From positions 496,001 to 547,137 of the forward strand of contig JAHRHZ010000282.1 of the NCBI GenBank assembly GCA_024137785.1: a stretch of DNA of 51,137 nucleotides, read 5' to 3'. The position numbers and the translations under genes were made by a program. The notes beneath the pieces are model-generated. The model ran no database searches and had not been told where the DNA came from. It saw nothing but the letters and a program-made list of their open reading frames with translations. This stretch comes from Ginglymostoma cirratum (Eukaryota). Positions 11,488 to 48,676 of the stretch are shown here, piece by piece (positions within the stretch are counted from its first letter, which is position 1; each line of letters opens with the position of its first letter).

Positions 11488-12220
11488 TTACACAATTTCC
11501 CAAGAATTCCCATTCTTTAACTCGGCTCTAAATTTACTCTGGGTCCCGGCATAAATAAATGGGTTGGTGCAGGAACTCATAAAGTGATACAGGTATCCAC
11601 TTTCCTGTTGAATAAATGCTGACTGACTTAAATTGAAACCTGAGAAATAAGGTACGTTCGCAATTCGGACATAGATGGCAGTTTTGAAGAAGATAACAGG
11701 ATGAAGCTGCTCGATATCGTGGAGAGTAAAACCATGGACTTTTTGCACTTTTCCATCCCTGGCTCCATCTGATTTTCTCCATTGTCCTGAGTTTGGAGTC
11801 TCCTGAGGGCTTTATTGGCCACTACGATATATCTGACAAGTGGACCATTGAGCAGTAAAATGAGGATGAATCGGAGACAAGGGCTTAAAGTGGTAGCAAT
11901 TCAGTCATATGATGACCATGCAGGTGATGTATAAAATATTAATTTACGTTTGCAGAACTAGGGTACGTTATTAATTACATAGAGAAGTTCATTTTTCTGA
12001 AAAAAAAAACATACATTTTATGTAGCTGAGTGCTGTCACGTTTCCATTAACCAAAACTGCTGTTACTTCCATGCAGTGCTTTATTTTCAGCTTCGGACAA
12101 CAAACGGACACGAATCGAACAAATGTGAAAGCAACAGTTAACCATGCTGAATAATCAATAGCTGTCTAAATGATGACATCATGCGTACTGCACACTGGAG
12201 TGATGTACAAGAAACGTGAC
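11488..12220 (-). pseudogene. GPR139/GPR142-like GPCR pseudogene 1, exon 2 (TM3-TM7; 5' part deleted)
   Basis: SRFLYITPVCS..LTVAFTFVRFVSVCCPKLKIKHC (degenerate DRF motif)..LRRLQTQDNGENQMEPGMEKCKKSMVLL..SSCTNPFIYAGTQSKFRAELK (NPxxY). Frameshifted. Confidence 0.9.
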
Positions 12221-12221
12221 G

Positions 12222-12535
12222 GGCCCTGCTGTTTCTCAGAATCAGGGACCCTTGTTTGATTCCAGCCTTGGCAGACTGATTGTGTGGAGGTTGCACATTG
12301 TCTCTGTGTATGTGTGGGTTTCTTCCAGGTGCACCGGTTTCCCCCTAGAGTCCAGCGCAGGTTAGTTTGATTGACGATGTTAAATTGTCCCACAGTGTTC
12401 AGGACAGTTTAGGCTAGGTGGGTTAATTATGTTGAATGTGAGGTTATGGCGATTGGTTGGGTGGGTCCTCGGACGGTGGGAGAACATTTAATGGATTCAA
12501 TGGCTTATCTGCACAGTAGGGATATCATGAATGCT
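12222..12535 (+). mobile_element. HE1-like (V-SINE type) tRNA SINE, 5'-truncated
   Basis: cagggacccttgtttgattcc B-box-like motif and central tgtgtggaggttgcacatt..tgtgggtttc core. Same family as 39195-39525. Confidence 0.75.
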
Positions 12536-14841
12536 GATTTGAAATCAAACAAACCAATGGAATAAGAATACAAATTAATATAATAACATACAACAGAGAT
12601 AAAAATACATCGAAAATAAGATACTAAAAATGGTCATAGTGACAAAGTGCTATGGGAATATATCCATGTTGAGAGATAGTAAATTAATCCAAAAGAAATC
12701 TGGAAACTGAAAAGAAAACAATCATATTTGTCTGAAGGTCAAAAGTTATCCTGTCTGACAAATTACTGCAAAATTATTTGCAATTAGAAATATCGATGTT
12801 CAAAGAAAGGGAAATGTTCAGAGAATCACACTGAAAATATTGAGATTGGTGAAATTAAGAATGGTTTATGAAAACATTTCTCTTGTACTACTTACATATC
12901 CGTGAGCAACTCAGTACGTATTTGTACTACTGTAATAAATCAGGTGCACTTTAAATTGTGAAACACACGCTTTTTGGTGTTTAACGTTTTTCATATGAAT
13001 GCTTGCAATCTTTCGTGTGTACGATGTTCAATTCCCACTTATTTGCATGGAATATCCAAAAATGGATAAAAAGTAAAATGAACAATAACCAGGCTGAACT
13101 GTCAAAAGATAGAGCAATTGAGCTAAAATGGAAATTGCTTGCATCTACTAGATATAAAACTGAATGAGAAATAAATGACAGAATCCAGTCTAATATTGCA
13201 GCAATTACCATGACTAAGATACCGCCACCATGAAGGAAACCAGCTGATACTGATAATACGAGTAAAAATGGAGCACCATCAGTGAATTAATTAGTTGATG
13301 CAGAAAGAGAGAGGGAGACAGTAAGAAAGAGAACAAGAGAGAACGAGTAAGAGAAAGAGAGATGGGGAGAGACATTTTGTGCGAGATTAAGGGAGAACAC
13401 GACCGTTAGTGGTTCAACTCCCAACAAATTCCCCCAGCCATTTTGCAGGACTCGGTATCAGAGGCATTTATTTAATATGTTATCCTAAGTTATAAGTTAT
13501 TTCTTATTCTGCAAACGATCAAACTACCATTAAAATATCAATTACATGCGCCAGGTCAATGGAATACTAATGCATTCTAATAGAGTTAGACCTATTAATA
13601 CATTCGAATTGAATTAGATCTAAGGAAGAAACAACAAGGAAGGTAAAATAAATGGACCGAAACACAGGCATCGAATAAACGAGAAAACGAGTGTTATGCG
13701 ACATTGTGGAAGATAAGGAAGGAAGAAAAAAACAAAGGAGCGAAGAAAGATGTAATAACCTCATCTTCCGATATTTCAAACGCCTTCATTGTCTCTCCAT
13801 TCCCGTCCCAGTCACATTCTATGACATCTCAGATCTCAGCGTTTCTCTCAGTCTGCTCCCTTCTTCTTTCCTCATATTCAAATCTCCATCAGTTTCATTC
13901 ATCCAGTTAACTGCTACAGCCTTACTATTTTGAAATTATTTCTTCAATCACTCTCGTTCATTTTTCACAATGTAAATTATAATCTAACTTCTTCATCAAG
14001 AATGTTTTTGTCTTGCATATTCATCTGTGTGTCTTTGGGAAAGAGTGTATTGGATAAACCTCTTTGAAAATTCCAGCACATTCACTACAACAACTGCAAC
14101 TCTATCTTCTAAAGTGGAATCTAGTGATTGACAATTAAGAATGCCATGGAAGACTCTCGTCCTACTAATAATAAATAATATAGCTATCCAAAATGAACAA
14201 ACCTATCAGACAAGACAATATGCGCAGTAAACTAAAAAAATTGCACATGCACTTTTACACATTTCCGTTCTTAATTCCAAAGATTATATTAGGAATGAGG
14301 AAAGCTCAGTTAGAGCTCAGCATGCAGAAGAAGAGTACTTCATTCGAGGTCGCACTATAGATTCTTGCAATCGGCAAAACTAATTTAATGTTGCAGTGCA
14401 GTTAATACAGTGATTATATTCTCATAATTCATTTACTATACCAGTAAGACCACAGTACAATCTACATACAATTGGCATACTACTTCCAAAACAGAAAAAA
14501 AAAAAACTCATGGTTTGCTATTGTAGATTAAGATTTAATGTCCAACAATATAACAGATTAATGTGACAAGGCCTGACACAAAGATCCATATTTCACCCAT
14601 ATGCAAACGGTATATCCATAAATACATAATAATAAATTGAAATAAATCTCAATTGATGTACTATAGCTCACCATAACAAAGGACAACATCATGCATGGCA
14701 CGTACATACATTGTTAATTGGTTGAATTCCCTTACATTCAGATAGCGTTGGATGTTGGAAAAATTCATCCTGATCCTGAAGGGGGAGATAAATTTTCCAG
14801 AAATATAAATACGAATAACTTACTTGAGATTTATTCCTTTC

Positions 14842-14914
14842 CAGGAATACCAAAAACTACCAGAATCGGATTTCAGATAACATAGAAAGAACCAATAGCT
14901 TGTCCATGCATCAT
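14842..14914 (-). pseudogene. GPCR pseudogene 1, exon 1
   Basis: MMHGQAIGSFYVI*NPILVVFGIP+G, 73 nt. In-frame stop, and donor mutated to gaaagg. Confidence 0.85.
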
Positions 14915-15179
14915 CTTTCAGAAACGAAACCATTTTCCAAAGTTGTGGAGCTCAGCTCTGCCCCATATTCAAGGTGACACTCATTGCACCTAGTGAAAGT
15001 CTCCAGACGGACAATAAAATTTCAACCTGCACCTTACTTACAATATACTGAACACAAGTTTAGATCACTATTCAACGCCTACCCTTTTCAAAATTGCAAG
15101 GAGAATGATGTTGTTATACTTGTAAGCAAAATGCTGGCTGCCTCGCTTTCACCATAACCCATCTCTTTTAGCCTCTGTC

Positions 15180-15957
15180 TGTTTAGGTTCTTTTTCGGAG
15201 ACCCTCACGGATTTGATGAAATAACAAGACACTGACCTGTTTAGAAAAACACAAATCCTTTATTACAAAGCAAGTACAAGCTGTGGAGGATAACTACTCA
15301 ACCCGGCACAGAGTGCAGAGTCTCGTAAGCGATTCGCCCCGAGCAGCGGAGAGTCCCCACTTTTTATACCTTATCGAGTGCATAATACATTAAGCAATTT
15401 TACATCTCACAATGGCATGTTACATGACACAATCACGACATCGGACAATGACATGATACACAAACAATTACTACATCGAAAACATAAAGAGAGCAGGATA
15501 CAGTATCGATCAAAGTGGCTGCTAACGGCAGGAGGCGATTTCAAGTTGCCAAAATGACAGAATGTAGTTTCAAGCCGCCGAAGTGTCTGGCTTCAACAAA
15601 AGTCAGTGCCCTGGCCCTTTCAGCAGAAACAGAAGTTACATTCATTATAGGATTTCAGAAGTCTCACACCTTTACAAACGCTGCCCACCTAATCTTATTT
15701 GAGACAGTTTCCACATACCCCTGTGCAGAAAGATAAAGATTTACAAAGTTTATACCTAATTCTATTCAGGTAGGAAGCTTAAGGCGGTGTTTTTCTACCT
15801 ACGTGTAAGAAGATAAGGATTTACAAAGTTTTACACCTAATTCTAGTCGGGCAGGAAGTTTTAAGGCAGTGCCTGTATACCTCTGTGTAAGCAGATAAAC
15901 AGCATTAATTTATAGGGAATATAGAAATCAATGGGATGTTATCCCAATAACATCTCA
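15180..15957 (-). mobile_element. Solo LTR (retrovirus-like), copy A
   Basis: On minus it reads TGAGATGTTATTGGG...AACCTAAACA, with TATA (ggtataaaaag), AATAAA and internal tandem U3 repeats. TSD tgtc/tgtt (4 bp, one mismatch). Highly similar to 20185-20970. Confidence 0.9.
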
Positions 15958-16425: not shown

Positions 16426-16751
16426 AACATGATTAATATAATATCAAATATCACATGCTCTGGGATTGTACTAACCGAGAACGTGCCTTACGTACTGTGA
16501 GCAGTGACAGTTATAATTGAGTATTTAAAGCGGTCTGGCCGCGTGTAGCAACAACTAACAAACTGCATAGTGCAATATGAATGCAAACGCTTTGAATTGT
16601 GGAGATTAACCATTTGTTTAATCAGAAAATAGACACGTATTGTGCAGGAGGGGCCAATGTTTTACTCTTGGATGGACGTGCCAAATAATTATAAAGCATG
16701 ACTACAACAGCGCATAATTTAAAAACACATAGTCGAGGTAATGCCGAATCA

Positions 16752-16850
16752 TAGATAACACAGTGTGGTGCTGAATGAACACAGCCAGCCAGGCAGTATC
16801 AGAGAAGCAGGAGAGCTGACGTTTCAGGTGGGGACCCGTCTTCGGAACAA
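16752..16850 (-). mobile_element. Penelope-derived HHR mini-element fragment
   Basis: gataacacagtgtggtgctgaatgaacacagcc..gctgacgtttcaggtgggaccc, the same terminal sequence as 6110 and 30911. Confidence 0.7.
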
Positions 16851-19400: not shown

Positions 19401-19404
19401 CAGT

Positions 19405-22058
19405 TGAACTAGAAACTAGTTTTTTTTCTAGGAAATAGGAATCTGAAATTCGGATGTTTGCATTGGTGTTGTTACTAATGGTCGGTGACCCCTTCAAAAG
19501 CAACATATAGCGGTCCCTATCAGATTGAGAAGAAGCTGTGTCAGGTCAAATATCTGGTAAAGATGCGAGGTAGGAAGAAAACTTTATCGGGTCTGTCACG
19601 TGAATATGTTGAAACCCTATTAATACAGGGACAGGAAAACGGAGAAGCAGTTATTAGTTACTGCCTCTCACAGTGGGGAATGAGAATCTGAATCATTTGA
19701 TTTTGATGCGAACCAAAGTAAGTTAAATAATGAAAAAGTCCTTTGAGAACGGGATAGGATAATAAGATATCTGTCTCAGAAACAGGGAACTGAACTGAAA
19801 GGCCTGTTGGAGCAATATGAGTCCACAGGTGGGAATAGAATGGGAAAGACTAATACTATAATGCATGACGTTGAAATCGGGAACGTAGCTTCGACAAAAC
19901 AACATCCCTGCAAGCTCAATCCACTTAAAGCTACATAGATACAGAAAGAAGTGGAAGCGATGCTGCAAGAAGACGTCATTGAGTCGAGTCAAAGTCAGTG
20001 GAGTTCGCTGATCATGTTGGATCCGAAGCCTGATGTCTCTCAATGGTTCTGTGTTGATTATCAGAAGGTCAATGACGTAACTAAATCGGACTCATACCCA
20101 ATTCCAAGACTGGAAGACTTGTGGAAAATGTTGGACAAGCCACTTAAATGAAAAAGTTGGACTTGATCCGCGGTTGCTAGCAAGTGAAATGTTATTGGGA
20201 TAACATCCCATTGATTTCTATATTCCCTATAAATTAATGCTCTTTCTCTGCTAACACAGAGGTATGCAGGCATTGCCTTAAAACTTCCTGCCCAACTAGA
20301 ATTAAGTGTAAAACTTTGTAAATCCTTATCTTCCTATACTTAAGTGGAAAAGAAAATGCCTTAAGCTTCCTGCCTGAATAGAATTAGGTATAAACTTTGT
20401 AAATCTTTATTTTCCTGCACAGGGGTATGTGGAAACTGTCTCAGATAAGATTAGGTGGCAACGTTTGTAAAGGTGTGAGACTTCTGAAATCCTATAAAGA
20501 ATGTAACTTCTGTTTCTGCTAAAGGGGCCAGGGCAGTGATCTTTGTTCAAGCCAGACACTTCGGAAGCTTGAAATTACAAACTGTCACTTTGGCAACTTG
20601 AAATCGCCTCCTGCCGTTAGCAGTCACTTTGCGAACAATCGATACTGTATCCTGCTTTCTTTATGTTTTAGATGCAGTAATTGTTTGTGTTATCATGTCA
20701 TTGTCCGATGGAGTGATTGTGTCATGTAACATGCCATTGTGAGATGTAAAATTGCTTTCTGTACTATGCACTCGATAAGGTATAAAAAGTGGGGACTGTC
20801 CGCTGCTTGGGGAAAATCACTTACAAGACTCTACACTCTGTGCCGGGTTGAGTACAGTGATCCTCCACAGCTCGTACTTGCTTTGGAATAAAGGATTTAA
20901 GATTTCCTAAACAGGTCAGTGTCTTGTTGTTACATCAAGTCCGTGAGGGTCTCCAAAAACGAACCTAACACAAGTACTTTTGTTGGAGAGATAGAGAGAG
21001 ACAGAAGTTTCTGCATTTGTTACTCCAATGGGCTGTATCAACTTAAACAATGCCCTTTGGTATGAAGAACGCACCAGCCACATTTCAAAGACTTGTGAAG
21101 CGAGTTGTGGCAGAATTGACTGATTGTGCTGTCTATATAGATGACGTCGTGATCTTTAGCCATTCATGGAAAGAGCACACACTGTACTTGGAAGCGCTCT
21201 TTGAAAGATGACAGGAGGTAAAACTTATAAACTTAGGAAAAACTGAGTTCGCAAAGGCAGAAGTGATGTTCTTGGGACATAACATCGAAAATGGATGGAT
21301 GACTCGAGGAACACAAATACGAAGGCCATCGAGGAATTTCCAAGCCCATACACGAAGAAAGAGGTGCTTCGATTTTTGGAACTGAACGGACTCTACTGGA
21401 AGTTTCTGCTGACCTTTCTTAACATGGTGGCACCGCTGACGGATTTGCTAAAGAAGAATTCGAAATTTTGGTGGACAGGACAATGCCAGGAGGCATTTGA
21501 GAATTTAAAAGCTGTATTAACCACCGCACCAGATTTCTCTAAAACCTTTAAAGTCGTTATTGCAGCTAGTGATAAAGGTGTTGAAGCTGTGCTAATGCAG
21601 GAGGATGATGTCGAAACTGAAAGGCAAATTCGAGACTTTTCAAAGAAACTCAATATTCATCAGATCAAATGCTCCACCTTTGAAATGGAATTATTGAGTT
21701 TGGTATTGGCTCTACAACATTTTAATGTCTCTGCTACGAACAATGTTTTGGAGCCCGATGTGTATACAGACCGGAACCCTCCCAGCTTTTTGTAAACATT
21801 TAAGGACAAAAATATGAGAGCATTTCATTGGAGGCTCATGCTACAGCCTTCTAACTCGATTGTACATGTTTTAGATCGTAGACATGCTGTTGCAGGTGTG
21901 GTATCATGATTTTAGTAAAATGTGTCGATAAATTAGTATGAAAAGGTATAACATTAATGTACTGAACTATGTGTTTCATGATAATAGTGTTAATATTCAA
22001 AAATAAATGAAGCCATCTTTTCATAACGATAGTTAATTTTCTTTCCTGAGGGGGGAGG
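19405..22058 (+). mobile_element. Gypsy/Gmr1-type LTR retrotransposon pol remnant (IN-RT-RNaseH order)
   Basis: Integrase C-terminus SGPYQIEKK...CHVNMLKPY (19500-19620) precedes RT (FCVDYQKVN..SYPIPR, MPFGMKNAPATFQ, AVYIDD at ~21130) and RNase H (ASDKGVEAVL..ELLSLVLALQHF..YTDRNP). PPT gaggggggagg at 22048-22058. Confidence 0.9.
20185..20970 (+). mobile_element. Solo LTR (retrovirus-like), copy B, inserted in the Gmr1 RT
   Basis: TGAAATGTTATTGGG...GAACCTAACA with perfect 4-bp TSD caag (20181-20184 and 20971-20974). Interrupts the DLxRGxxQV motif. Has TATA and AATAAA. Confidence 0.92.
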
Positions 22059-22625: not shown

Positions 22626-23111
22626 AGTTATTGTTCGAAGTTTTCTCTCACTATCATCAATGTGAGACTCATTGCACAGTAATAGACGGCGGTGTCAAAT
22701 AGCAGCACCCTGAAATGTTCGATTGGTACAAATTGTCTGACTGTTGGATTGTATCAGAAAACCGGACCTAAGCAAAGTCCGCTTTCAATTAATCACCACC
22801 GCTCTTGAACCTCCAGACTGCGAACTCAGGCCGTCTGCCTGCGGACTGACGGTAATAAAAGAAGTAATCAGCATCATCAGTGTCGGTGCAGTTTAAAGAG
22901 ACATCTTCTCCCTCTGTCTGTGTGAGCGAGGGTTCCTGCAGAGCAACGGATCCCCCATTGCTCAGATCTGTAACACAGGTTAGAGAAAACGGCAATCAGC
23001 GATGAAATGTTTGAGTGAAACAAACAAAATTTGAAAATTCACGGTATTACCTAAAGAAAGGATAGAAATTAGAGCAGAAAATCTCATGCAGAACGTTAGG
23101 CATATGTCCAT
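22626..23111 (-). pseudogene. TCR alpha/delta V pseudogene with near-intact 23-RSS
   Basis: Leader 23111-23051 (MDICLTFCMRFSALISILSL, gtaat donor). V exon 22967-22665: GSVALQEPSLTQTEGEDVSLNCT..YFFYYRQSAGRRPEF..*..*VRFS../DTAVYYCAMS, two stops and a frameshift. RSS CACATTG-23-ACAATAACT. Confidence 0.93.
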
Positions 23112-24568: not shown

Positions 24569-24607
24569 TGTTCTTGTACGAGGCTCCCTCTGGTCTCTGT
24601 CACTGTG
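24569..24607 (-). other. 23-bp spacer recombination signal sequence
   Basis: CACAGTG (24607-24601), acagagaccagagggagcctcgt (23 nt), ACAAGAACA (24577-24569). Confidence 0.95.
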
Positions 24608-25126
24608 TCTTTCACTCCGCAGTAATACACGGCATTGTCAGACAGTCGCAGATCACGGATGGTGAAATTCCCTTCACTTTTCACATCGTCGAAATTAGCA
24701 GAAAATCGAGGCCCCACACCTTTAGCTCTGATAGCATCGCCATAGTTAGGGATGTAGATCAAGAATGTTAGGGTTTTGTCGTGATCCTGACGATATAGTT
24801 GCAAAGAATATGTACTAGCAGTGGTCGAATAATTGTAACTAATGGTCACCAATTCATCTTCAAATTTCATCGCTGAAAACGGCTCCTGGGAGATCGAGTC
24901 TGCACCACCAACACCTGCAGAAATGTATGAATACAGAACATCAATATATTATCCGTATGCTATGGTATGTAACATTATCTGGTAACTGAATACTTTCAAA
25001 ACAGAGAGAAAGTGCATTTAAAACAATATCAGTAATGCCTGTAAGTGGAAGAGTGTGTATATTTTAAGATGAATTACCAGTTATGAGAGCTGCGGTAGTG
25101 AAGAAATAGTATAGAGTAACCGACAT
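24608..25126 (-). CDS. TCR alpha/delta-type V gene segment, open frame, non-canonical (leader 25126-25078, V exon 24914-24608)
   Basis: MSVTLYYFFTTAALIT/GVGGADSISQEPFSAMKFEDELVTISYNYSTTASTYSLQLYRQDHDKTLTFLIYIPNYGDAIRAKGVGPRFSANFDDVKSEGNFTIRDLRLSDNAVYYCGVK. GT-AG phase-1 intron, no stops. Cys23 is Tyr and Trp41 is Leu. Confidence 0.9.
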
Positions 25127-25310: not shown

Positions 25311-25344
25311 GGGCAGCAGTGAATGGAACTGGGACAGGACAGGA

Positions 25345-28267: not shown

Positions 28268-28500
28268 GTAACATAGTGGTAGTTTTAGTTCTGTCTCGGA
28301 GAAGATACAGTCTGACTGGTTGTACCATTTATTACCCGATTTCCGTAACGTCATCAGATCTCCTGGTCTTAGTCAATTAAACTGTGAATTGGTGGAATTT
28401 AATTCACGTCCAGTTTCCTGTCTATCACACTAATGAACACTCTTCATTTTGTCTTAACCTCTGTAGCTGTACTTTCATCTACTACCACCCTCTGTCTTCT
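28268..28500 (+). pseudogene. GPR139-like GPCR pseudogene 4, 5' fragment of exon 2 (TM1-TM2)
   Basis: Acceptor ctctgatag, then GNIVVVLVLSRRRYSLTGCTIYYPISVTSSDLLVLVN*, homologous to the exon-2 starts at 41044 and 47869. Truncated at a CR1 fragment. A possible decayed exon 1 lies at 27260-27323. Confidence 0.75.
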
Positions 28501-28504
28501 ATTG

Positions 28505-29035
28505 GACAGTCAGTTTTGCATCCAGACAGCCAGATTTTCCTGAATCCTATGTCTCCTTACTTTCTGAAAGAGCCGACCATGTGGAGCCTTCTCGAATGCC
28601 TTGCTAAAATCAATATAAACCACATCCACTGCTCTACCTTTGTCGATGTGTTTTGTCATATTCTCAAAGAATTCATTAGGACTTGTGAGGCATGAACTGC
28701 CCCTCACAAATCCACGCTGCCTATTTCTAATCACATGTGCTTTTCCAAATAATCATAAGTACTATCTCTCGGAACCCTCTTCAATAATTTGCCCACCACA
28801 GAAGTAAGACTGACTGGTCTGTAATTTCCAGTATTATCTCTATTCCCTTTCTTGAACAAGGGAATGACATTTTCCAACCTCCAATCTTCTGGCACGACTC
28901 CAATGGAAAGTGAGGACGCAAAGATCATTGTCAAAGGGGTAGCAGTGTCTTCCCTTGTTTCTCGTAGTAACCTTGGGTATATCCCGTATGGCCCAGGGGA
29001 CATGTCTCTCCTCATGCTTTTCCAGATTTCTGGCC
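28505..29035 (-). mobile_element. CR1 LINE RT fragment
   Basis: SPGPYGIYPRLLRE..VPEDWR..NVIPLFKKGNRDNTGNYRPVSLTSVVGKLL and QRGFVRGSSCLT..VDVVYIDFSKAFEKAPH. Confidence 0.95.
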
Positions 29036-29059
29036 CATCCTTCTTCCTAACAACAACCT

Positions 29060-30316
29060 TTTGGAGCAGCAACAACCTGTTCGAGCACCGGAACAGTCCA
29101 CCCTGCCTTCACGATAAGATTATCATCACCACTATGTTAGCTTCGGGTGATAAAAGAGAGATAGCAATATTTGTAGGCAGGGCGGAAATTACAGCTAACG
29201 GGGCCTCGTGTTATCTCTAACTTATCACCTTATTTGAAAGAGATAATGAAATGGAAGGCCGTTACATTATTCCTGATACTAATGCCTTCCTCACTGGTGG
29301 TTATGCATTTAGCTAACAAGGCCCTAAACTCTGGAATTTTCCTCCTCGATGGCACCATCTCTCTCTGTCTGCTTTAGGACATTCTTCATAATCTAAATGT
29401 TTCAATCAAAGTTTCGTCCAGTTGTCTGCTTATGTACTTCCATCATATATTTGCTTTTTAAAGCTGCTGTAGAATGGATTACTGTGCAAACTAGAGATGT
29501 TAAATTAAAGTCAACTTTCTCAGTTGTGCCACAACCTGAAAAAGAAAAAAAAATCCTCTTTTGAGAAACTTATAAATCGTATCATCAGAAAGCGAATGGT
29601 TTATAAAAGTAATCTTAATTTTCAACTCACCTGTGCCAAATAATTCCAGATTGAATAGACAATTCCACATTATTAATGGTACTGTTCGATGGGAACGCAC
29701 AATGTAGCCACCACTGCATGCTACCTGATGTCACACTGTAAACTGTATAATGACTAGATGTGCTTTTGTATTTCAATGCACGTAACAGAATGACTGAATG
29801 CAAAATTGCATTTTCTGATAATCTGCTACTATTCGTGCTCAAAGACGTTTATTTTTACAGCGCAATGATTCACGATTATACCACATGACACTAAAATCGT
29901 AAGTTTGCATTTGCAAAGTTAAAATAAAACTTGAATTACAGAACTGGTCACTATTCATGCAATGTCACAGGAGATTTCATTCGTCAGAAATTTAATAAAT
30001 GCTATTCCATCAATGTGAAGCATAATACACCGAATAACGTCTAGTAATACTCTCTACAGCAAGTATAAGCACTTCATTATAATTCATTTAGCAGCTTTAC
30101 AATGCCACCTAATACTTCCAAGTATAGTTCATTCCGGTTTAAGTCCATCACACTGGGAATAGACTAATAATTTTGGGCCGATTCTGAAACAGAAGAAACC
30201 GCTTTTTAAAAAACGAATAACTTTAATGTGAATGTTTGCTTATCAGGAGCACAAAAAAAAGCCATAATATGGATAACAGATTTTTCAAAGAAGAGGCAAT
30301 TTGATGGTCCATGCAT
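29060..30316 (-). pseudogene. GPR139-like GPCR pseudogene 5: exon 1 (30316-30244) and 5' stub of exon 2 (29140-~29060)
   Basis: Exon 1 MHGPSNCLFFE..(CYP in the adjacent frame)..MAFFCAP+G, donor mutated to ataagc. Exon 2 starts after ccgaag: ANIVVMIILS*RQGGLFRC. Truncated at the CR1. Confidence 0.75.
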
Positions 30317-36923: not shown

Positions 36924-37562
36924 TGTTATGGACCAGACTAGACCCCCGCAAAATATTTTCAGAAAGTACGCTGCACCCTCACCTTTTCTTATTTTAAAGG
37001 CAAAGATAAAGTGTCTCAGATGCAATGCAACTGGTCAAACTATTCCACATTAAGCAACACAATTTATTTAAATACAAACAAAGAAACAGAAATTTAGAAT
37101 GAATTAACTCGGTTGAAAAACTTCACAGTATAATAGATGAAATAAGAATTCAAAAATTAACTGATCCAACATAGTATAATCTCATAAACACACCGCTTTG
37201 CAAAAAGGAAAATTCAGATACAGATTCTTACATGTAGTATTCCAATCCACGTGGAAACAACATCAAGATGAAATTCAGAGACTGTAACAGTCAAGAGACA
37301 TTCACCGAAACTTCCACCTCTTTTGAGACCGCAATACATTCTGCTTAAAGCTAACCCTATAAACTAAAAACAAATACTGGAACGCCTGGCCTGTGAGAAC
37401 TGGCCAAACCCAGACTGTTTCCATTTTGCCAATTTTAAAAACAACCCAAAGGCCTCACACATTGTTTACTTTCTTAGATAGAGTTTGCGGCCTCCGCCTC
37501 ACAACTTCTCTTCAGAAAAAAGGGACAAAATAATCTTTTGAAAGCTGCAGCGTGGTCTTACA
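36924..37562 (-). mobile_element. Solo Gypsy-type LTR
   Basis: TGTTA...TTACA termini; homologous to 17623-19400. TSD ambiguous. Confidence 0.7.
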
Positions 37563-39525: not shown

Positions 39526-41479
39526 GCCTTGTTAAACCCAGATTAAAGAATTTCCAGCTTTTACCCCTCACTTTCGACAAACAAAAATGAGCAGAGAAGG
39601 CGAAGAAGGACTGGGGCCAGAATGAAACACTCCACTGTCCAAAGATGAGAGAAAATTGATTTAAAGGGGTAATGGGAACTTGAGATACGAGACAGCAATT
39701 TCATAGTACCAGAGGTTTCAACAAGATGCTCACCTCATGTGACTCTAACCTGGTATGTTTCTGCTGTCTAATGGATAGGTATAAGTTATGATAAAGCATG
39801 AAAAATTTCATCAATTTATCATTCCCAACAAAGTTAGATTTTACCGTCTCCTCTCCTTTCGGCAGCTTAGAGAGAGACAATGAAAACACAACGCAAACCG
39901 CAAAAGCATCATTATTATCTCTGATAAGGGAAGATCCAATTGGTCCGTTACTCATTTTTTATTTCAATCTGAGTGCAGTGAGTTGGACTCCAGAAAAAAA
40001 TCGCTGCAAAGTATATATTTTCCTGTTGTAATAAAACTTAAATGCAGGACGTGTACTCTTCCAGATGATTCCTGAAATAGTGACACTAATATATATTCCA
40101 TGATTTAAGATCACATCCATGAAGACCACTGCTCAGATAATTCAGCATTCCTTCGTATTGCAAAGAATGAAATAGGTCTTATAATTCTACACACTGCACT
40201 GTTTATTAAGTAAAGTGATCCTGGTGAACTGACACACCAGTATCTTCAACTCCTTGCAGAACTTGTCCTGGCCCACCACACAAATAAAGAAGGTGTTGCA
40301 GGAACTAAGTGACTGGATCATGTTGATCGTCTCTTGAAGAAGTTACTGCCGGTTATTGAATCCCAGCTTGAGACGTACTCAACACCCGAAACAGTTCAGT
40401 ACAGGAATGGTGCAACGCACATGGCCGCACGGAGCAAAAAGTTGGAAGAGATGGCAAAGAACAGGACAATGGGCCTCTTGCGGTCTGAGTCTCCGCCATT
40501 TTCAGAAACCCGCAGCCTCTTACGGGCTTTGCACGCCGTTAAGGTATGTATCATATTCAAGACATTGAATAAACAGCAGAACGAGAAGGAATGGGAGAAA
40601 GGATGCGGTCAAGCCAGTCTCAAGTCTGCTGAGCGGGTGAGGTGTGGAAGGTCAGCTTGATATCACAAAACCAAGACACGATGTCCCGGATGTACAAAGG
40701 CTGGCAGATGAAATACAATGGGATTTCCTTCACACAGCTCAGATCACATATTACTCCAATAATCACTGAAGCAGTTTTCTCGATGCAGAATCTGGTTTTC
40801 AGCCTCTGGCAGATGAAAGATACAAAATTGTAAATGGTGAAGGCCAGACTGAGTATAGACCAGCGCAGCACTGAGGCAGCATTCGGGAGTTGTCGAGAAT
40901 ACACTGTAGCTAAAATAAATGCGTCCGATGTGGTTGAGGATGCACCCAGTGATGATGACACGGGTATGGCCACCAGTTAGTAGGTGACAGAGAGGGACAG
41001 GCCGAAATGTCTTTGGGATACGATTGCAATCGCCACAAAATTGGCTGTGAGAGATGAAAGGAGAACAATGTCTCCAAGTGGTCTCCAAATATGCGTTCCC
41101 ACCTGATACCGAATTTTACTTAAACTTTTCTGTCCAATCACATTTCCATCTCGAAACTCTGGTTGTTCCAATTGGCGATTATTCAGTTTCCAAAGTTCAG
41201 GTAACGTTTCTCAAAAGAAAAAAATATATAAGAACGCTTTCTTTCTCCACCATGAAAACCATGTCTAGGTCTCTCAGTCAATATCTGTGGCCAGATATCC
41301 AATTTAATTTAAATCCTCGTCGATTAACATCCCGTGTGTTACCACTGACCAGAAGCTGAACAGAACCAGATACATAAATGAAGCATTGCAAGAGCAAGTC
41401 AGCAGCTCAGACTGCTGCAGCACATAAATCACGTCTTGAATCCTCAAAGTCTGTTCACGATTTACGAGACTCAATTCGG

Positions 41480-41975
41480 GAATGTAATGAAATACTCACC
41501 AATTGAATCAATGTACGCAACTGCAACAACACTTAAGAAAATTGATACCATCCAGGACAAAGTAGCCCAATTTATTGTCACGACATCCAGAAACATCCAT
41601 TTCCATTGACGTTCGTTAGCAACACCATCTACAAGAGGCACTGCAGAAAATCACGAGATCCTCAGACAGCAACTTCAAACACACCAACACTTTCATTTAG
41701 AAGGACAAGGGAAGCAGACACCTGGGAACATCACCATGTGCGAATTCCCCTCTAGCCACTCACCATCCTGACCTGGGGATGTATTATTGCTCCTTCACTG
41801 TAATTGGGTCGATTTTCCTGGAAGTTCCTTCCTAATGCATTGTGGATCTACATACTGCAGATAGGCTGCTGTGGCTCAAGAAGGAAGCTCACAGCCACAT
41901 ACTCAAGGAACAAAGCGAGGTAGGCAATTAACTGCTGGCACAGCTAGGAAGGCTCAAATCCCACAAGAGATTTAA
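41480..41975 (+). mobile_element. LINE 3' end in the GPCR intron
   Basis: LKKIDTIQDKVAQFI-like ORF2 end plus the tail shared with 34480-34875. Confidence 0.75.
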
Positions 41976-42689
41976 AAAAGTTGCTGTTCAGCCAACCTTA
42001 CTTCCAATGATTTACGTTGTCTCCCATCAGGCATAATCGCAGTTTGGGTAATCTTATTTTTGGAAGTTTCAAATACATTCATAGCTCTGTCAATTCTACC
42101 CCGTTTACATTATGCAGCTTGCTCTGTTCTCAGGTGGCTGCAATTTGGATATTAATTCCTTCATCAGCTTTTAAAGCTGACCCGACCATCCCCACCCCCA
42201 ACAACGATCTCCAGAGGTCACTAAATCAACGTCCCCACCTGTCTCGGCTTCTTCAGGACGCTCTTCAATGATGTGCAGATGATATTTTTTATTCGTTTGG
42301 TTTGATCGTCCCTTATGTTATTCATCAACAGATTTGGATTTTAAAAATCCCGACCTTACACACTGGAATGGGCTGAGAAGCAATTCCAGACACACCTTCT
42401 CAAATGGAATTTAGTGATGAGCAGCAAATATTATGCTTGACTGTAACAGGAACGTTCTGTTATTTATAATTACATGTGATTCTCCTCAATGAAACTAAAT
42501 GCTCAAAATTTATCAGTACAAGACAAAACACATTAATCCACTTACCACTAATCATATCTTTCCGCAAATAATCAATTAAATCACGTCAAAAATGGAGATT
42601 GCCGAAAAGCAACGTGCTACATTGGAACTATTTCATCCTCTCCATGATTAGCACCACAGAGTCGTGTAATCAGTTAATGCATTATATGT

Positions 42690-42870
42690 TGCAATTCCTT
42701 CACTGTCAATGTGTAGAAATCCTGAAATTTCCTCCATAACTGCTCTGTGGATCTCATGGACTGCAACAGTTCAAGAAGGCAGCTCACCACCACCTTCTCA
42801 AGAAGCAGTTAGAGGTGGATAATTAACTGCTAGTCCAGCTAGCCAGCTCCGCATCCGACAGAGATTAAAA
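42690..42870 (+). mobile_element. LINE/SINE 3' tail fragment
   Basis: ggactgcaacagttcaagaaggcagctcaccaccaccttctcaag. Confidence 0.7.
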
Positions 42871-44099
42871 TGTTGCTGTTCGCACTTGACAACGTAATGA
42901 ATACACTGCAATAGTCTATTTTCTGATTCAATGATAATACCAGCTCAAGTTGCTGATTTACGATATAGGGAGTGATTATTATGCAGAGTTCTCAAGTACA
43001 GGCTAGTGCTTTTCCTCAAAAGCAGAATTGTGCCAAATCCTCAATAAAATATACAATTATGTTCACTTCACATCACACAGCGTACAATGCATATTTCATC
43101 AACCTACTAAAAGTACATTTTTATAAATGTACTGCAAAATATATTAAATCATATCCGTCAATTCACCGCATTGCGCTTACTTAATGCATGCTAATTAGAA
43201 TAGCACAGCACAATACAATACAATGAATGGGCTGATGTCCGTCTTCACTCATACAATGCTTATTATTATTATAAAGGTTTAGCCAATCTTGGAAGAACAA
43301 CACCACAATTTCCAACTAATTGCAAAAATGAGTCACTTACTTATTAGGAATATATTCCTTACCAGGAGCATCTATTACAGCTTGAATAGGATAGCAAATG
43401 GTATAGAAGAAGCTTTTCACTGGTCCGTGCATCATCTGTAAGAAGCTAAAACTGTATCCCTCATCTCGGTGGCATATTCAATGTATCCCTCATTTATTTC
43501 AAATGACAGTCTCCAGAGAAATAATCAAACTGCACAGTGCACCTCAGTTACAATTCAGTGAACTAACACATTAGTCCAACGTTTCATGCCATTCACTTTA
43601 ATCAACGGAAGGGTTGGTAGCTCAGTTTCAGTTGTCAGCTAACTGCTGGCTAGAAATTCCCCGCCTGTAAATCATAATTTTGCTTTTCATCAAGTGGGCT
43701 TGCTGATGTTACTGAGTGGAGTTTATATCTCTAATCTAAAGCTAACTCTGCCTATGTCTGCCACATTCTAAATAATTCCTTTCATTTGACTGTCAGATTT
43801 GTGAATGTAATTGGCAGAGCTTTACATTCTAATGCATTAACATTGCCTAAGAATTGTCAGAGATTCACGTTGAACTGCATGGAATTACTGTTGAAATAAG
43901 TGGAGGGTATTTGAGGTCGAACCATCACATGTTAATTCTGGGAAATGAGCAAACGTTTCAGTCTTCCTGGTAAACTAGAAACACAACAAAGGGCTCACAA
44001 ATGACAATGACTCCGAGTACCTGATGTCTCATGGCATTACATAATACGAGGGAAAGGAAAGCTTCTGATGATTATCATTCTTCACCCATTTAGCTGATG

Positions 44100-45370
44100 A
44101 ACTAGTGCGCTCCGTATTGAACATTACTTGGAGGATGCTCTGAGAATTTCAAAGGTACAGAAATCACTTTGCCTGGGGGAACTGCAACATCACACTATGA
44201 GTGGTTCGGCAGCCCTTCTAGTTATTGAACTAGTTAAATCCTAAAGGATTTATTTGTAAGGCAAGGTCTGCTGCAGATCGTGGGGAAACTAACAATAGGG
44301 AAAACATACTTGACCTTTACATCACAAATCGGCCTGCTGCAGAAACATCTGTACACAACAATACTGTCCATAGCAACGGCCGCACAATTCTTCTGGCAAT
44401 GAAGTTTCACCTTCACATTGAGAATTCCGTCCTTTATGTTCCGTAGCATTGTCGCTGTGCTGAATGGGACAGATTTCGAACTGATCCAGCAACACAAGAC
44501 TCGGCACCCGTAAGCCAAATTGGGCCATCAGCAGCAACAGAGCCCAACGCAATCTGTACTGTCATGGCACGGAACTTTTCCCACTCTCTCATATCACCAA
44601 GCAAAGGGATTATTCTTAATTAAAGGAAGAATGCAGGGGGCATGCACGGAGCAGCAGTAACACATAAAGTATGTTGCTATCCTGATGAAGTTACAAAACA
44701 GGGCTATTTGTATGCTCGACGGCAGAAGGAGCAAGTGATAGTCAGCGCTAAATGATCCCACTACCAAATAATCAGGCCTGCTACATCCAGTTGTAAACGG
44801 TGGTGGGCATTTTAAAAGTTCACTGGAGATTGAGACTCCACAAATATCCCTCGCCTCAACAAAAGGGGAGTCCAGCACGTCAGTCCAGAATATAAATTTG
44901 AAACTATCACTATAAACTACAGCCCTCCATCTCGCCTCCTCCAGTCGTCCTGAGCATCACAGATGCCTGTATTCAGTCATTTAGATACACTCCACATGAT
45001 ATCAAGAAATAGTTGGAGACACCGGACACTGGAAATGCTATGAGGCCTAAAACCATTCTGGTAATAGTCCTGGAGATATGTACTCCAGAATATTCCGTTG
45101 CCTTGGCCAAGCTTTTCCAGTACAATTACATAACAGTCATCTAACTGACAACATGAAAAATTTCCCAGCTTTGCCCTGCACACACAAAAAAAAATAAACA
45201 GGACAGATTCAACCTGGCCAATTACCACCACACCAGTCTACCCGTGACCATCAGTAAAGTGGTGGAAGGTACTATCAACAGTGCTATCAAGTAGCTCCTA
45301 CTCAGCAATAACTTGCTCATAGACTTCAAGTTTGAGTTCCGCCAGGGCATTACAGTTTCTGATCTAGTAA
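44100..45370 (+). mobile_element. Decayed LINE (APE endonuclease to RT start)
   Basis: LLQIVGKLTIGKTYLT (endonuclease), SNGRTILL (SDH-like), NAMRPKTILVIVLE.C.PE and NLANYHHTSL..ISKVVEG (NYRPISL-like). Confidence 0.75.
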
Positions 45371-45373
45371 GCT

Positions 45374-45466
45374 ATAACAAGGTGTAGAGCTGGATGAACA
45401 CAGCAGGCCAAGCAGCATCAGAGGAGCAGGAAAGCTGACGTTTCGGGCCTAGACCCTTCCTCAGAC
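45374..45466 (-). mobile_element. Penelope terminal fragment with HHR
   Basis: Near-identical to 30916-31006; CTGAGGAAGGGTCTAGGCCCGAAACGTC on minus. Confidence 0.85.
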
Positions 45467-46997
45467 AATGCGGCTGTGATGCATCTTGGATACTTTATCC
45501 ATTTTCTTTTGTGTGTCTCAGGTGTGGGAACAAACTATGCATCCGAAGCAACACAGAAAAGTTTAAAGTCGAATACTTCGACATCTAGTCGTGATTTGCA
45601 AACAAAAAATGGATTTTATCAAAATCGGCTAATAAATTCATAATCTTTTAATTATACGTTCAGAATTATCGTTAATTGTCTTTCCGATTATTGCCTGTGC
45701 CAGAATAATAATACAACGAACTCCGGATGCTGGAGACTTGAAACAAAACAAAAATTGCTGGTGAAAATCAATTGATTTGGCAGCAGCTGTGGGGACAAAG
45801 CAGAGTCATCGTTTCGAGTCTGTAACTGTTCATTACAACTGTCTATTTCAGTTGACATTCCATGAATATTAAAGTTACGTGTTGAAGTCAACTATTCAGT
45901 TCTTCTTTCATCCTTTCTGAATGATGGAACCTCCAATACTCCTACCTCTAATTCAGTGTGAGCAATAAGCAACAGACTTTCCGAAAATTTTCAATTCACA
46001 AGAATATATAGCACACATTATAAAAATTAAATGTAGTTTAAATTACTTAGTGTGATTCAAAACGAATAGATAACAACAATGATGTCCACAATACTTGCAA
46101 TGGAGGAATGACAGTTTCTCCTCATCATAATATAACTTTCACTGAAGAAAAGCAGTCATATACAATTTCAGTGACTGAAAATTGACGTACCTTACTTGGC
46201 CAAATCCACCACTATCCTTACCCCATTAAGAATATTCACAGAGAGAGAGTTGACAAATGACGATCACAACCTGTCGAATGTGTAGCGTAGTTAATGGTCT
46301 AGGGCACGAGGAAAACATAGTTTCTCTTTGCTTTGTTTAACATTGATCAAGATGTAAAGTTAAATATTGATGCAATAGTTCTTTTGTAGAGGAAAGGTGG
46401 AGCATGAAATTTAACATCAGATGCAGAATGTGTGCATACGGGATGGTGAGGGTGGTGGGGCGTGGTGAGTTCTCTGGAGCTGCTGACACGGTGAAAGACA
46501 TAAACTAAATTCTGAAGTTTATCAAGAGTGGCACAGGTTGTACGATCCAGACATGACATGAAATCGACATCACTGTTGAGGGCATAATAGGCGTTTCATC
46601 AGGCTGGTGTCAAAATGAATGACAATTTGAGCGGTTCAGGTAAATACATGCAATAGCCCTGAGTCGTGAATGAGGTAAATGTAGGAAGGGGGTGACAGAA
46701 GAATGTGATTGAGAAGGAAAGAGGAACGTGGAGAAAGAGATGTGTATGAAATGAAATGGCCTGGATCACTGGAAATCTGAAATAGCGATCACTATGCGTT
46801 AGCATTTCATCCTGAAAAAGACAACTTCTGGTAGTTTTATATTTCATAGTTTTAGCAACAACAGATGTCAAGTCTGGAGAATGGAGTGTTCATATCTGCA
46901 GTGGAGAAGCTTGAACGTACAAATGTTATTCAATTTTGAGAGAGAAACAGCCTAACACGCTGAGACACTCCGATGGAAGGAAAACAACGTAACAAAA

Positions 46998-48676
46998 TTA
47001 TTTGCACCCAGTGAGAGGTGTGAAAGGAGACAATAGCACCTTCTTCAGGTCGTCTCAGAGCTTGTTCTGGGACATTACATGAATGAAGACGTTGTCTCAG
47101 GAACGGAGCATTTTCAGCATGTTGGTCATCTTTTTGAGAACGAAATGTGGGTTATTCAAATCCAAACCACTGAAGCTGGCATCACCAGTAACCTGCACAT
47201 CGAGGTAGTGTCCGACGTATGTGATCCATTGCATGAGGAAGCCGAACACAATAATGAAGAGCAGTACAAGGTACCTCTTAGATTTGGCCGTCTCTGGGTC
47301 TCCGTGGCTCAATGTGCCCCAGGTCTCTACCTTCAGACCTTGCTGGCCGCCAGGAGGTATCTGACAGTCAACGTTTTGAACTGCAGAATAAGGAGGAAAG
47401 GAGAATAGGTCACAAATGTATTTCAGCCAGTCATACGACATGTGCCTCTGAAGACACAGAACCTGGATATCCCATTTACAATGGACAAGGTCTGGTAGAT
47501 GAAGTAGGAAGGCAGATTCTAGACGGATTTCAGGGCACAAGCCACTCCAATAAACAATGAGATAGTTTTCTTCATGCAGTATTTGGCCTTCAGACTCTGG
47601 CAGCAGATCACAACAAAACGGTCAATGGTAAAGGCCACAGTTCGCCAGGCATACTATCCAAGCTATCATGGATCATTACAGTGCTGAGTGCACAGACGGT
47701 GGTCCTACACAGGACATTATACCAGAACTTAATGCTGCAGAACCATTTGAGGATGCAGTCAGTGATGATGACACGAAAATTGCTGTGGAATATCCCTACC
47801 AAATAATTGGCGTGCACCGTGAGAATCCGCACCGTCTTCATAAAAGAATTACGATTACCAGTATGTTGGTTGTGAGAGATTGTGAAATATGACTGAACTG
47901 ACTTGTGTAACTACTGGATGTAATTTTAATGTACAATACAACCATAAAATCATCGTCTTCAATTGTCTTCAAAATTGTTATGAAATCTATGCATAAATTT
48001 CGAAAACAGTGATGGAGATTGTTCCATATAACAACAAAAACAGTACATTGTATTTTAAAGTGTTGCAATAGAACGTAATTTTGAGCAGTTTACCTAATTA
48101 ATGTTCAGGCAGAAGCATACAATACAATTCCTGTATTAATAATCTAATAAATAAGTGTTCTATAATTTCTCAGTATAATAGGTTGAATATAATCCTGCTA
48201 CATATTGCATATGGGTGTAATTCAGTATAACAATACATTTTACATTCAGGTAGTTCTGTTATAACACGTGTTTCATTAACACAGATTAACTGTAAAGTGA
48301 TTGATGAATAGTGGGCCCGGTTTGAATAACACATACATTCTGCTTTCCAGGTATAGAGATTTTCTATAGTGATCTCCCTACAACGCGATTTTCTATGGTG
48401 ATTTTCCATAGCGAATTTTTCTATAGCACGAGGTCACACAAGAACACAATTATCACGTTATAGGAGAACGACAAGAATTCATATGGGAACATCAGTTGAC
48501 TTTCCATCAGCTGGGAACATCAAAAAGTCAAGACTATCCTGATATGGAAAGGAAAAGACTTTGGTGTATTTAAAAACAACTATTGTTGGAGCCTGTGACT
48601 TACCAGGGACGCCAATAACAACAATTGTTGGATGATAAATGGCATAGAACGGGCCATTTTGCTTTTATAATTAAAT
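46998..48676 (-). pseudogene. GPR139-like GPCR pseudogene 3 (exon 1 ~48676-48604; exon 2 47869-46998)
   Basis: Exon 1 ..NGPFYAIYHPTIVVIGVP+G|gtaagt (ATG lost). Acceptor mutated to cacaa. ANILVIVILL*RRCGFSRC..VIITDCILK..VAFTIDRFVVICCQSLKAKYCMKKT..DPETAKSKRYLVLLF..NVFIHVMSQNKL. Confidence 0.9.
48247..48475. mobile_element. pogo/Tigger-like MITE
   Basis: Imperfect TIRs CAGGTAGTTCTGTTATAAC / GTTATAGGAGAACGACAAG and internal gattttctatag repeats. TA TSD not preserved. Confidence 0.55.

What the first reader, a model, noticed from the sequence alone, without database searches (positions are those of the whole stretch)
11488..48676. GPR139-like GPCR genes interleaved with TCR V segments
Seen: five two-exon GPCR copies (14914/12220, 28268, 30316/29140, 43435/41044, 48604/47869). 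Four have a recognisable ~73-nt first exon with a phase-1 intron. They alternate with RSS-bearing V genes and V relics across the window. Known: mammalian TRA/TRD has olfactory receptors mixed in at its V-distal end, and cartilaginous fish have large GPR139-like expansions. Inference: in this lineage a different GPCR family has co-expanded inside an antigen-receptor V array, possibly as V+GPCR duplication units. Intervening GPCRs would be somatically deleted or inverted by V(D)J recombination, and intact neighbours might be expressed clonally in T cells. All copies here are dead, so function is unproven.
Basis: partly seen in the sequence, partly recalled or inferred. Interest (0 to 1): 0.82.

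Follow-up and report, generated by a model that had tools for sequence, protein, structure and literature searches.

The report
Dead orphan-receptor genes among shark TCR V segments
This stretch of a shark T-cell-receptor V-gene array really does hold five broken copies of a large, shark-and-ray-specific family of GPR139-like receptor genes, but here they are neutrally decaying relics and nothing shows that they were copied together with the V genes or act in T cells.

Summary
Five GPR139-like class A GPCR pseudogenes lie at the stated coordinates. Four are on the minus strand; the copy at 28268 is a plus-strand fragment. Four have a 73-nt first exon ending in phase 1, which matches residues 1-24 of intact relatives.

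They sit among one working V segment and three V pseudogenes. A database V-J-C protein is 100% identical to the working V.

The family is real and large: 752 protein clusters at E<=1e-10, and the 120 best listed are all sharks, skates and rays. Human GPR139 is its nearest solved relative, but only distantly, so it is a separate family rather than GPR139 itself. I found no paper that describes it.

The co-duplication idea is not supported in this window:
- Paralogue homology covers only about -225 bp to the gene end, and no V lies inside it.
- The three best copies belong to separate old clades.
- The order is not strictly alternating.

A related organism holds copy 4 collinearly at about 92.5% identity, with equal divergence in exons and non-coding DNA. 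That is neutral decay.

First-stage notes of this scan, all unchecked, report the same theme elsewhere in this genome.

The parts
14842..14914 (-). c1 exon 1 (73 nt, phase 1). It reads MMHGQAIGSFYVI*NPILVVFGIP, has one in-frame stop, and the donor is mutated to GA.
11470..12222 (-). c1 exon 2 body, TM3 to helix 8 (family residues about 73-325). It has 2 frameshifts and 4 stops, and TM1-TM2 are missing. It ends in NPFIY...KFRAELK.
   Evidence: Best relatives are P0228 and P0225, 55-56% identity.
12996..13286 (-). Possible further relic (TM2-TM3) inside the c1 'intron'. It is either the lost 5' part of c1 exon 2 or another copy. The evidence is weak.
   Evidence: E 0.035-0.18
28268..28525 (+). 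c2: inverted fragment of exon 2 (TM1 to TM3) with one stop. It starts GNIVVVLVLSRRRYSLTGC...
   Evidence: 21 family proteins at E<1e-3, best 2e-6
30244..30316 (-). c3 exon 1 (73 nt), reading MHGPSNCLFFEKSVIHIMAFFCAP. The donor is mutated to AT.
29055..29140 (-). c3 exon 2 stub, ANIVVMIILS*RQGGLFRCSNRLLLL (TM1 to ICL1), cut off by a retroelement-like ORF.
   Evidence: E 0.013
28731..29054 (-). Retroelement-like ORF that ends c3. It contains ...NYRPVSLTSVVGKLL, which I recognise from memory as a LINE reverse-transcriptase motif. Pfam gives no hit.
43363..43435 (-). c4 exon 1 (73 nt), MMHGPVKSFFYTICYPIQAVIDAP, with ATG and GT donor intact.
40214..41044 (-). c4 exon 2. The AG acceptor is intact. 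There is a stop after TM1, and at least 3 frameshifts and 3 stops further on.
   Evidence: Best relatives are P0235 and P0200, 51-54% identity.
48604..48676 (-). c5 exon 1 (73 nt). The ATG is lost (...NGPFYAIYHPTIVVIGVP) and the GT donor is intact.
47001..47869 (-). c5 exon 2. The acceptor AG is mutated to AA. There are at least 3 frameshifts and at least 6 stops, and the 3' half is the best preserved.
   Evidence: Best relative is P0168, about 50% identity.
43436..43651 (-). Block upstream of c4 exon 1 that is conserved with c1 (14915-15139), c3 (30317-30532) and c5 (48677-48823). It is a presumed promoter or 5' UTR of the GPCR unit.
   Evidence: about 60% identity, E 2e-9 to 1e-26
24569..25126 (-). 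V1, a working TCR V. Leader 25126-25076, V exon 24915-24608, heptamer CACAGTG 24607-24601, 23-bp spacer, nonamer 24577-24569.
22626..22964 (-). V2 pseudogene with stops and a frameshift. It ends ...DTAVYYCAMS and has a 23-bp-spacer RSS at 22664.
50124..50432 (-). V3 pseudogene with one stop. It reads ...YLQC...FLYRQ...FFCAVR and its RSS is decayed.
6712..6977 (-). V4 pseudogene of the same V family as V3. Both follow a tetranucleotide repeat tract.
   Evidence: E 8e-6
37244..37354 (-). Possible extra GPCR relic (LSR..CGL.RG..., TM1 to TM2). The evidence is weak.
   Evidence: E 0.08
51035..51115 (-). Possible extra GPCR relic (ICL1 to TM2) at the window's end. The evidence is weak.
   Evidence: E 0.06

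Best explanation
The stretch is a decaying piece of a mixed birth-and-death gene array inside the shark TCR alpha/delta V region. Two unrelated multigene families share it.

One is rearranging V segments. The other is a chondrichthyan-expanded family of two-exon, roughly 323-residue class A GPCRs, which annotation pipelines label 'probable GPR139'.

Each GPCR unit is self-contained. It has a conserved block of about 225 bp upstream, a 73-nt exon 1 that encodes MHGP... and half of TM1, a phase-1 intron of 0.7-2.7 kb, and one large exon 2.

All five copies in this window are pseudogenes that evolve neutrally and do nothing here.

Their presence among V segments is most simply explained by both families living in a region prone to duplication and deletion. 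This resembles the olfactory-receptor genes between TRAV1 and TRAV2 in mammals and needs no functional link.

Shown:
- identity and structure of the copies;
- their disablement;
- the size and taxon range of the family;
- neutral divergence of c4;
- that V1 is used in a rearranged product.

Inferred:
- that the interleaving arose by block duplication and decay;
- that V(D)J joining of V segments upstream of these copies to J segments downstream of them removes the copies from that allele.
For: - Copies and lesions.
- Family: a TM3-TM4 profile built from three window copies found 115 representative proteins at E<=1e-3. Of the 30 I looked up by name, 28 are chondrichthyan.
- P0002 finds 752 clusters at E<=1e-10, and the top 120 are all elasmobranch.
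- Intact members start MHGPAKGLFYAICYP..GAP|AN, which is exon 1.
- Nearest solved structure, by a profile of 50 members: GPR139 at 70 bits against PrRP receptor at 57.5.
- Neutrality: contigs of a related organism from 4 studies cover c4 collinearly (40191-45017). Divergence is 6.0-7.2% in exon 2, 7.0% in the intron, 7.7% around exon 1 and 5.7-8.9% upstream.
- The array is a true TCR locus. P0241 is the V1 leader and V exon at 100% identity, followed by a J motif (FGSGTQLTVEP) and the start of a constant region. Earlier notes place a NAR-TCR cassette 18 kb beyond the window (unchecked).
- The family is not exclusive to TCR loci: chimeric models with unrelated genes, and members on many contigs per species.
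Against: - First-stage notes of this scan, all unchecked, report the same interleaving over more than 600 kb of this scaffold and on other pieces next to V segments and an Ig minilocus. Some of those copies are said to be intact. A recurrent association with antigen-receptor V arrays would be more than coincidence.
- The windows of this scan may be biased towards immune loci, so I cannot give a genome-wide background density.
- Expression was not tested at all.
Confidence: 0.78

Rival explanations
1. V and GPCR genes were amplified together as V+GPCR cassettes, so the two families co-expanded inside the array.
For: - Four of five GPCR copies and all four V segments share one orientation.
- V3 lies 1.45 kb 5' of c5 exon 1.
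- V3 and V4 are one V family, and each has a weak GPCR relic 0.6-2 kb on its 5' side.
Against: - No homology among the units beyond about -225 to -390 bp; only dispersed repeats match further out.
- c1, c4 and c5 map to three different old clades.
- Three or four GPCR copies lie in a row without a recognisable V between them.
- At about 60% DNA identity any neutral linker would be erased, so the test has little power either way.
Confidence: 0.12
2. The family is a working receptor repertoire, chemosensory or immune. Its residence in the TCR V array gives intact members lymphocyte-specific or clonally variegated expression through locus chromatin and V(D)J deletion.
For: - The family is large and lineage-specific, with many pseudogenes and a very short N-terminus, as in chemoreceptor families.
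- Each unit keeps a conserved upstream block.
- Unchecked notes report intact copies nearby.
Against: - All copies here are dead, and c4 diverges neutrally.
- No RNA evidence.
- Each unit has its own conserved upstream block, which argues for control independent of V promoters.
- The family also lies beside unrelated genes elsewhere.
- A catshark sensory-organ study found no GPCR among the 50 most specific genes of its brain and olfactory epithelium library (PMC11979771).
Confidence: 0.07
3. The hits are chance, or repeat-derived open reading frames rather than GPCR genes.
For: Pfam and single-fragment PDB searches on the stop-free pieces found no 7tm family.
Against: - tblastn E values down to 1e-60, collinear over TM1 to helix 8.
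- The profile built from the pieces recovers 115 proteins. All 20 of them scanned against Pfam match 7tm_1 except P0039, where no 7tm_1 hit was listed.
- Exon 1, the splice sites and the upstream block are shared.
Confidence: 0.01

Closest known systems
Olfactory-receptor genes inside the mammalian TRA/TRD V region (human OR10G2 between TRAV1-1 and TRAV1-2, OR4E2 between TRAV1-2 and TRAV2; mouse Olfr1507-1509 between TRAV1 and TRAV2; PMC4574546)
   Same: Class A GPCR genes of a birth-and-death family lie between rearranging V segments of the alpha/delta locus. No functional tie to T cells is known.
   Different: - The GPCR family is different: GPR139-like and two-exon, not single-exon ORs.
- There are many more copies, at least 5 in 51 kb here, and by unchecked notes they are spread over more than 600 kb rather than confined to the V-distal end.
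- In this window all copies are pseudogenes.
Human GPR139 (PDB 7VUG and others), orphan class A receptor
   Same: - It is the best solved relative of the family: 70 bits with the profile and 42 bits for P0002.
- It shares the P-A-N-(I/L)-L..I.ILS motif in TM1 and T(I/F)DR(Y/F) in TM3.
   Different: - The similarity is only distant. For clade member P0228 the PrRP receptor scores slightly higher, 32 against 30 bits.
- The N-terminus is about 8 residues long.
- DRF replaces DRY, and TM6 has LLLW without proline.
- There are hundreds of paralogues rather than a single conserved gene.
Vertebrate chemoreceptor multigene families (OR, TAAR, V1R/ORA)
   Same: Lineage-specific expansion, tandem clusters, a high share of pseudogenes, and a short N-terminus.
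   Different: No expression or ligand data exist. The gene has a coding intron in TM1. No paper in the searched library treats it as a chemoreceptor.

Membership tests
Rhodopsin-class (class A) GPCR, Pfam 7tm_1 | Seven-helix domain matching PF00001 above its gathering score | tested here: met
   Nine of the ten nearest intact relatives scanned score 34-76 bits against a cut-off of 30.5; P0001, a 274-aa partial, scores 27.1. The window's own pieces are too short and broken to score in Pfam, but they align collinearly to those relatives from TM1 to helix 8.
Rhodopsin-class (class A) GPCR, Pfam 7tm_1 | Conserved TM2 Asp, TM3 D-R-Y/F, TM6 Trp, TM7 N-x-x-x-Y | tested here: met
   In the 50-member alignment D54 is invariant, and D107 R108 F109, W246 and N291...Y295 are nearly invariant. 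The proline of CWxP and of NPxxY is not conserved. c1 keeps NPFIY and c5 keeps TIDRF.
GPR139 orthologue | High, reciprocal similarity to vertebrate GPR139, one conserved gene per genome | tested here: not met
   Intact members give only 30-42 bits to human GPR139. For P0228 the PrRP receptor scores higher. There are hundreds of paralogues per clade.
GPR139-like clade (nearest known relative) | GPR139 is the top solved hit for the family as a whole | tested here: met
   Profile of 50 members: GPR139 70.1 bits (E 1.6e-18), next PrRP receptor 57.5 bits.
GPR139-like clade (nearest known relative) | Same intron position as the human GPR139 gene (coding intron in TM1) | not testable with these tools
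   No human or other GPR139 gene structure was available. The shark intron splits ...G(A/V)P|AN... in phase 1.
Chondrichthyan 'probable GPR139' expansion | 73-nt exon 1 encoding MHG(P)... to ...GxP, phase-1 intron, exon 2 starting (A)N(L/I)..I.ILSRGRCGLS | tested here: met
   Seen in c1, c3, c4 and c5. Exon 1 matches residues 1-25 of intact proteins. 42 of 100 intact members start MHG.
Functional TCR V gene segment (V1) | Leader, V-set exon and RSS with 23-bp spacer; used in a rearranged transcript | tested here: met
   V-set E 1.2e-10. Heptamer CACAGTG, 23-bp spacer, nonamer with 2 mismatches. P0241 carries the V at 100% identity joined to J and C.
V+GPCR co-duplication cassette | Homology between units extends across both a V and a GPCR; V and GPCR trees are congruent | tested here: not met
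   Homology stops about 225-390 bp upstream of exon 1. The copies fall in different old clades. Power is low because the duplicates are old.

The most novel reading that the evidence does not exclude
The GPR139-like genes are a working, undescribed chondrichthyan receptor repertoire that has been tied to antigen-receptor V arrays since before the shark orders split. Intact members would be brought under lymphocyte-locus control, silenced, deleted or expressed clone by clone according to the V(D)J rearrangement of the allele. That would be a germline-encoded receptor family whose repertoire per cell is shaped by somatic recombination.
Probability: 0.06. Interest if true: 0.88.

Novelty: new variant of a known kind. 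Interest (0 to 1): 0.5.

Why it matters
Sharks and rays carry a very large family of orphan class A receptors that databases file under the name of one human gene, GPR139. I found no paper that describes it.

By my own recollection, not checked here, elasmobranchs have very few classical odorant receptors, so an unstudied receptor expansion of this size deserves a look as a candidate sensory or immune repertoire.

Its residence inside the TCR alpha/delta V array extends the mammalian curiosity of olfactory-receptor genes among TRAV genes to another receptor family and to the oldest jawed vertebrates. It may say something about how V arrays grow.

This particular window adds only anatomy: gene structure, a conserved upstream block, and proof of decay. 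It adds no function.

Tried and rejected
- Pfam and PDB phmmer on single stop-free pieces gave nothing or only E of about 1. The pieces are too short, and a three-copy profile was needed.
- blastn of the window against itself at default sensitivity showed no similarity between the copies. A word-7 search showed about 60% identity.
- I tried to tie family-rich scaffolds of other species to TCR genes through contig lengths, using V1 and V3 as queries. V1 returned only its own rearranged product and V3 returned nothing. A blank here means nothing.
- I looked for V-GPCR fusion models among 241 fetched proteins and found none.
- The look-up of sequencing runs listed only DNA-like runs of a related organism and no RNA.
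- RSS-like hits at 14029, 38988 and 43533 were rejected as chance. 43533 lies in the conserved upstream block of c4, and 2.3 hits are expected by chance.
All searches used stop-free pieces by reference. For the same reason the copies were placed on the family tree through their best intact relatives only.
Full report
**What the window is.** The window is vertebrate DNA of about 40% GC without gaps. Earlier notes of this scan place a germline NAR-TCR cassette 18 kb beyond its end (unchecked), which would make this the shark TCR alpha/delta V region.

I confirmed the TCR character directly. The minus strand carries a V gene, V1:
- leader at 25126-25076;
- V-set exon at 24915-24608 (Pfam V-set, E 1.2e-10);
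- a perfect CACAGTG heptamer, a 23-bp spacer and a nonamer.

A database protein, P0241, is 100% identical to this leader and V exon. It continues into a J motif (FGSGTQLTVEP) and the start of a constant region. So this V is used in rearranged receptors.

Three V pseudogenes share its strand: V2 at 22964-22665 with an RSS, V3 at 50432-50124, and V4 at 6977-6712. V3 and V4 belong to the same V family.

**The GPCR copies.** Stop-free pieces on the minus strand looked like class A receptors. They include TIDRF in TM3 and NPFIY...KFRAELK in TM7. Taken alone, however, they gave nothing in Pfam or against PDB sequences.

The TM3-TM4 pieces of three copies align with each other at 34-45% identity. A profile built from them found 115 representative proteins at E<=1e-3 in 1.84 billion. 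The ten top-ranked ones scanned all match 7tm_1, nine of them above Pfam's cut-off.

With these proteins, tblastn maps the following:
- c1 at 12222-11470;
- c4 at 41044-40214;
- c5 at 47869-47001;
- a plus-strand fragment, c2, at 28268-28525;
- a short stub, c3, at 29140-29055, which runs into a retroelement-like ORF.

E values reach 1e-60.

They are 73 nt long and lie at 14914-14842, 30316-30244, 43435-43363 and 48676-48604. Each ends ...CCTG followed by GT, or by a mutated GA or AT. They match residues 1-25 of intact proteins, which begin MHGPAKGLFYAICYP..GAP|AN.

- c2 is inverted.
- c1's '12220' is not an acceptor. It is the point where homology resumes at family residue 73, so TM1-TM2 are missing.

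Every copy is disabled by stops, frameshifts, a lost ATG or lost splice signals. Four further weak relics may exist, at 51115-51035, 37354-37244, 13286-12996 and 9093-9028. Each has E between 0.03 and 0.5 and none is relied on.

**The family.** Of the 30 representative proteins whose names I looked up, 28 come from sharks, rays, skates or the elephant shark. Most are labelled 'probable G-protein coupled receptor 139'. A salamander cluster and a nemertean sit at the weak tail.

P0002 alone finds 752 clusters (at 90% identity) with E<=1e-10. The best 120 are all elasmobranch, with many per species.

Intact members are about 323 residues long with an N-terminus of roughly eight residues. They show DRF in TM3, LLLW in TM6 and N.FIY in TM7.

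A 50-member profile puts human GPR139 first among solved structures, at 70 bits, with the PrRP receptor next at 57.5. Single members reach only 30-42 bits, and for P0228 the PrRP receptor is marginally ahead.

So 'GPR139-like' is a fair label for the nearest relative. These are not GPR139 orthologues. They form a separate, chondrichthyan-expanded family.

I found no paper that mentions it. Searches combining GPR139 with shark, cartilaginous or elasmobranch terms returned nothing relevant. A catshark sensory-organ study does not list it.

**Is it a V+GPCR cassette?** A sensitive DNA comparison of the four units shows about 60% identity from roughly 225 bp upstream of exon 1, through exon 1, into the first 330 bp of the intron, and again across exon 2. 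The weakest pair reaches about 390 bp upstream. Further upstream only a dispersed repeat of about 100 bp matches.

So the recognisable unit is the GPCR gene with its own proximal block, and no V lies inside it.

The nearest intact relatives of the three best copies fall in different clades:
- c1: P0228 from a cow shark and P0225 from a zebra shark, 55-56% identity;
- c4: P0235 and P0200;
- c5: P0168 and P0151.

These clades lie 0.7-1.2 substitutions per site apart, against 0.2-0.4 within a clade. The copies are therefore old paralogues that predate the split of shark orders, not recent local duplicates.

The order along the minus strand is V3, c5, c4, c3, c2 (inverted), V1, V2, c1, V4.

This does not support cassettes. 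The duplicates are so old, however, that any neutral linker would be unrecognisable, so the test is weak in both directions.

**Neutral decay.** DNA contigs of a related organism (coded A) from four studies cover 40191-45017 collinearly at about 92.5% identity. Divergence by region is:
- 6.0-7.2% over exon 2;
- 7.0% in the intron;
- 7.7% around exon 1;
- 5.7-8.9% upstream.

Copy c4 was therefore already in place in the common ancestor, and it is not under purifying selection.

**Is the family tied to TCR loci?** Unchecked first-stage notes of this scan report the same interleaving from 373 kb before to 240 kb beyond this window. They also report it on other pieces of the genome, next to V segments, an Ig minilocus, zinc-finger genes and an MHC class I-like gene, with some intact copies. 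So the scan has found this theme before on other DNA of this genome.

Evidence from other species points the other way:
- Chimeric gene models fuse family members to integrin alpha-X-like, VSIG10-like-2 and sodium-channel genes and to a hemopexin-domain gene.
- Within a species, many members of the P0002 subfamily share one scaffold, for example 10 of 11 listed whale-shark proteins on an 11.7-Mb contig.

I could not find out whether that scaffold is the TCR scaffold.

**Function.** V(D)J deletion of DNA between a rearranging V and its J is textbook. On alleles that use V1, c1 would be lost and c2-c5 kept, provided J and C lie on the low-coordinate side, as the V orientation implies. That placement is an inference.

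Nothing suggests that this matters. The copies here are dead, each unit has its own conserved upstream block, and no RNA run was listed for the stretch. Clonal expression in T cells remains pure conjecture.

**Verdict.**
- The interleaving and the family expansion are real.
- The co-duplication and T-cell ideas are unsupported in this window.

The closest known situation is the olfactory-receptor genes among TRAV genes in mammals (PMC4574546). Here a different and far more numerous receptor family is involved.

The more interesting lead is the family itself: a large, apparently undescribed receptor expansion in cartilaginous fishes.

Noticed in passing
window 24569-25126 (minus): V1 has Tyr where the first conserved Cys is expected and Leu where the conserved Trp is expected (...TISYNY...LQLYRQ...). 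It is nevertheless found at 100% identity in a database V-J-C protein (P0241, 150 aa), so this odd V is rearranged and expressed.
   Followed up: partly
window 43436-43651, 14915-15139, 30317-30532, 48677-48823 (minus): A block of about 225 bp upstream of exon 1, plus about 330 bp of intron 1 in c1 and c4, is conserved at about 60% among old paralogues. It includes ...GGTGCA...TTGATTATT..TCTGGAGACT.TCA...AATGAG. It is probably the family's promoter or 5' UTR.
   Followed up: partly
window 40191-45017: A related organism (coded A, DNA contigs from 4 studies) holds this locus collinearly at about 92.5% identity. It has small length differences, for example 4 bases at 40568 inside c4 exon 2, near one of the window's frameshifts.
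   Followed up: partly
window 45374-45473; also 6104-6306, 16746-16847, 26706-27145, 30907-31015, 34125-34230: A dispersed repeat of about 100 bp with very high copy number (summed contig depth of 6-8 million in organism A). It looks SINE-like.
   Followed up: no
window 30910-32330 and 34229-32800: A 1.4-kb inverted repeat at 87% identity, GC-rich (up to 54%), with long ORFs on both arms (proline-rich, with a ...VVYCIRCSRCGLLYIGETK... motif) and no Pfam match. It is probably a retroelement inserted upstream of c3.
   Followed up: partly
window 21295-21792 (plus): A fragment of an LTR-retrotransposon polymerase (Pfam RT_RNaseH_2, E 5e-18).
   Followed up: yes
window 15183-15957 and 20968-20185: A 785-bp inverted repeat at 91% identity, flanking about 4 kb between c1 and V2. 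Not examined.
   Followed up: no
window 50513-50830 and 6937-7115: Tetranucleotide repeat tracts lie just 5' of both V3 and V4, the two V pseudogenes of one family. So at least the V plus its upstream tract was duplicated as a block.
   Followed up: partly
window 28268-29140: c2 (plus) and c3 (minus) face each other across a retroelement-like ORF, and both begin with the same part of exon 2 (TM1). This is an inverted partial duplication rather than a simple insertion. The events were not reconstructed.
   Followed up: partly
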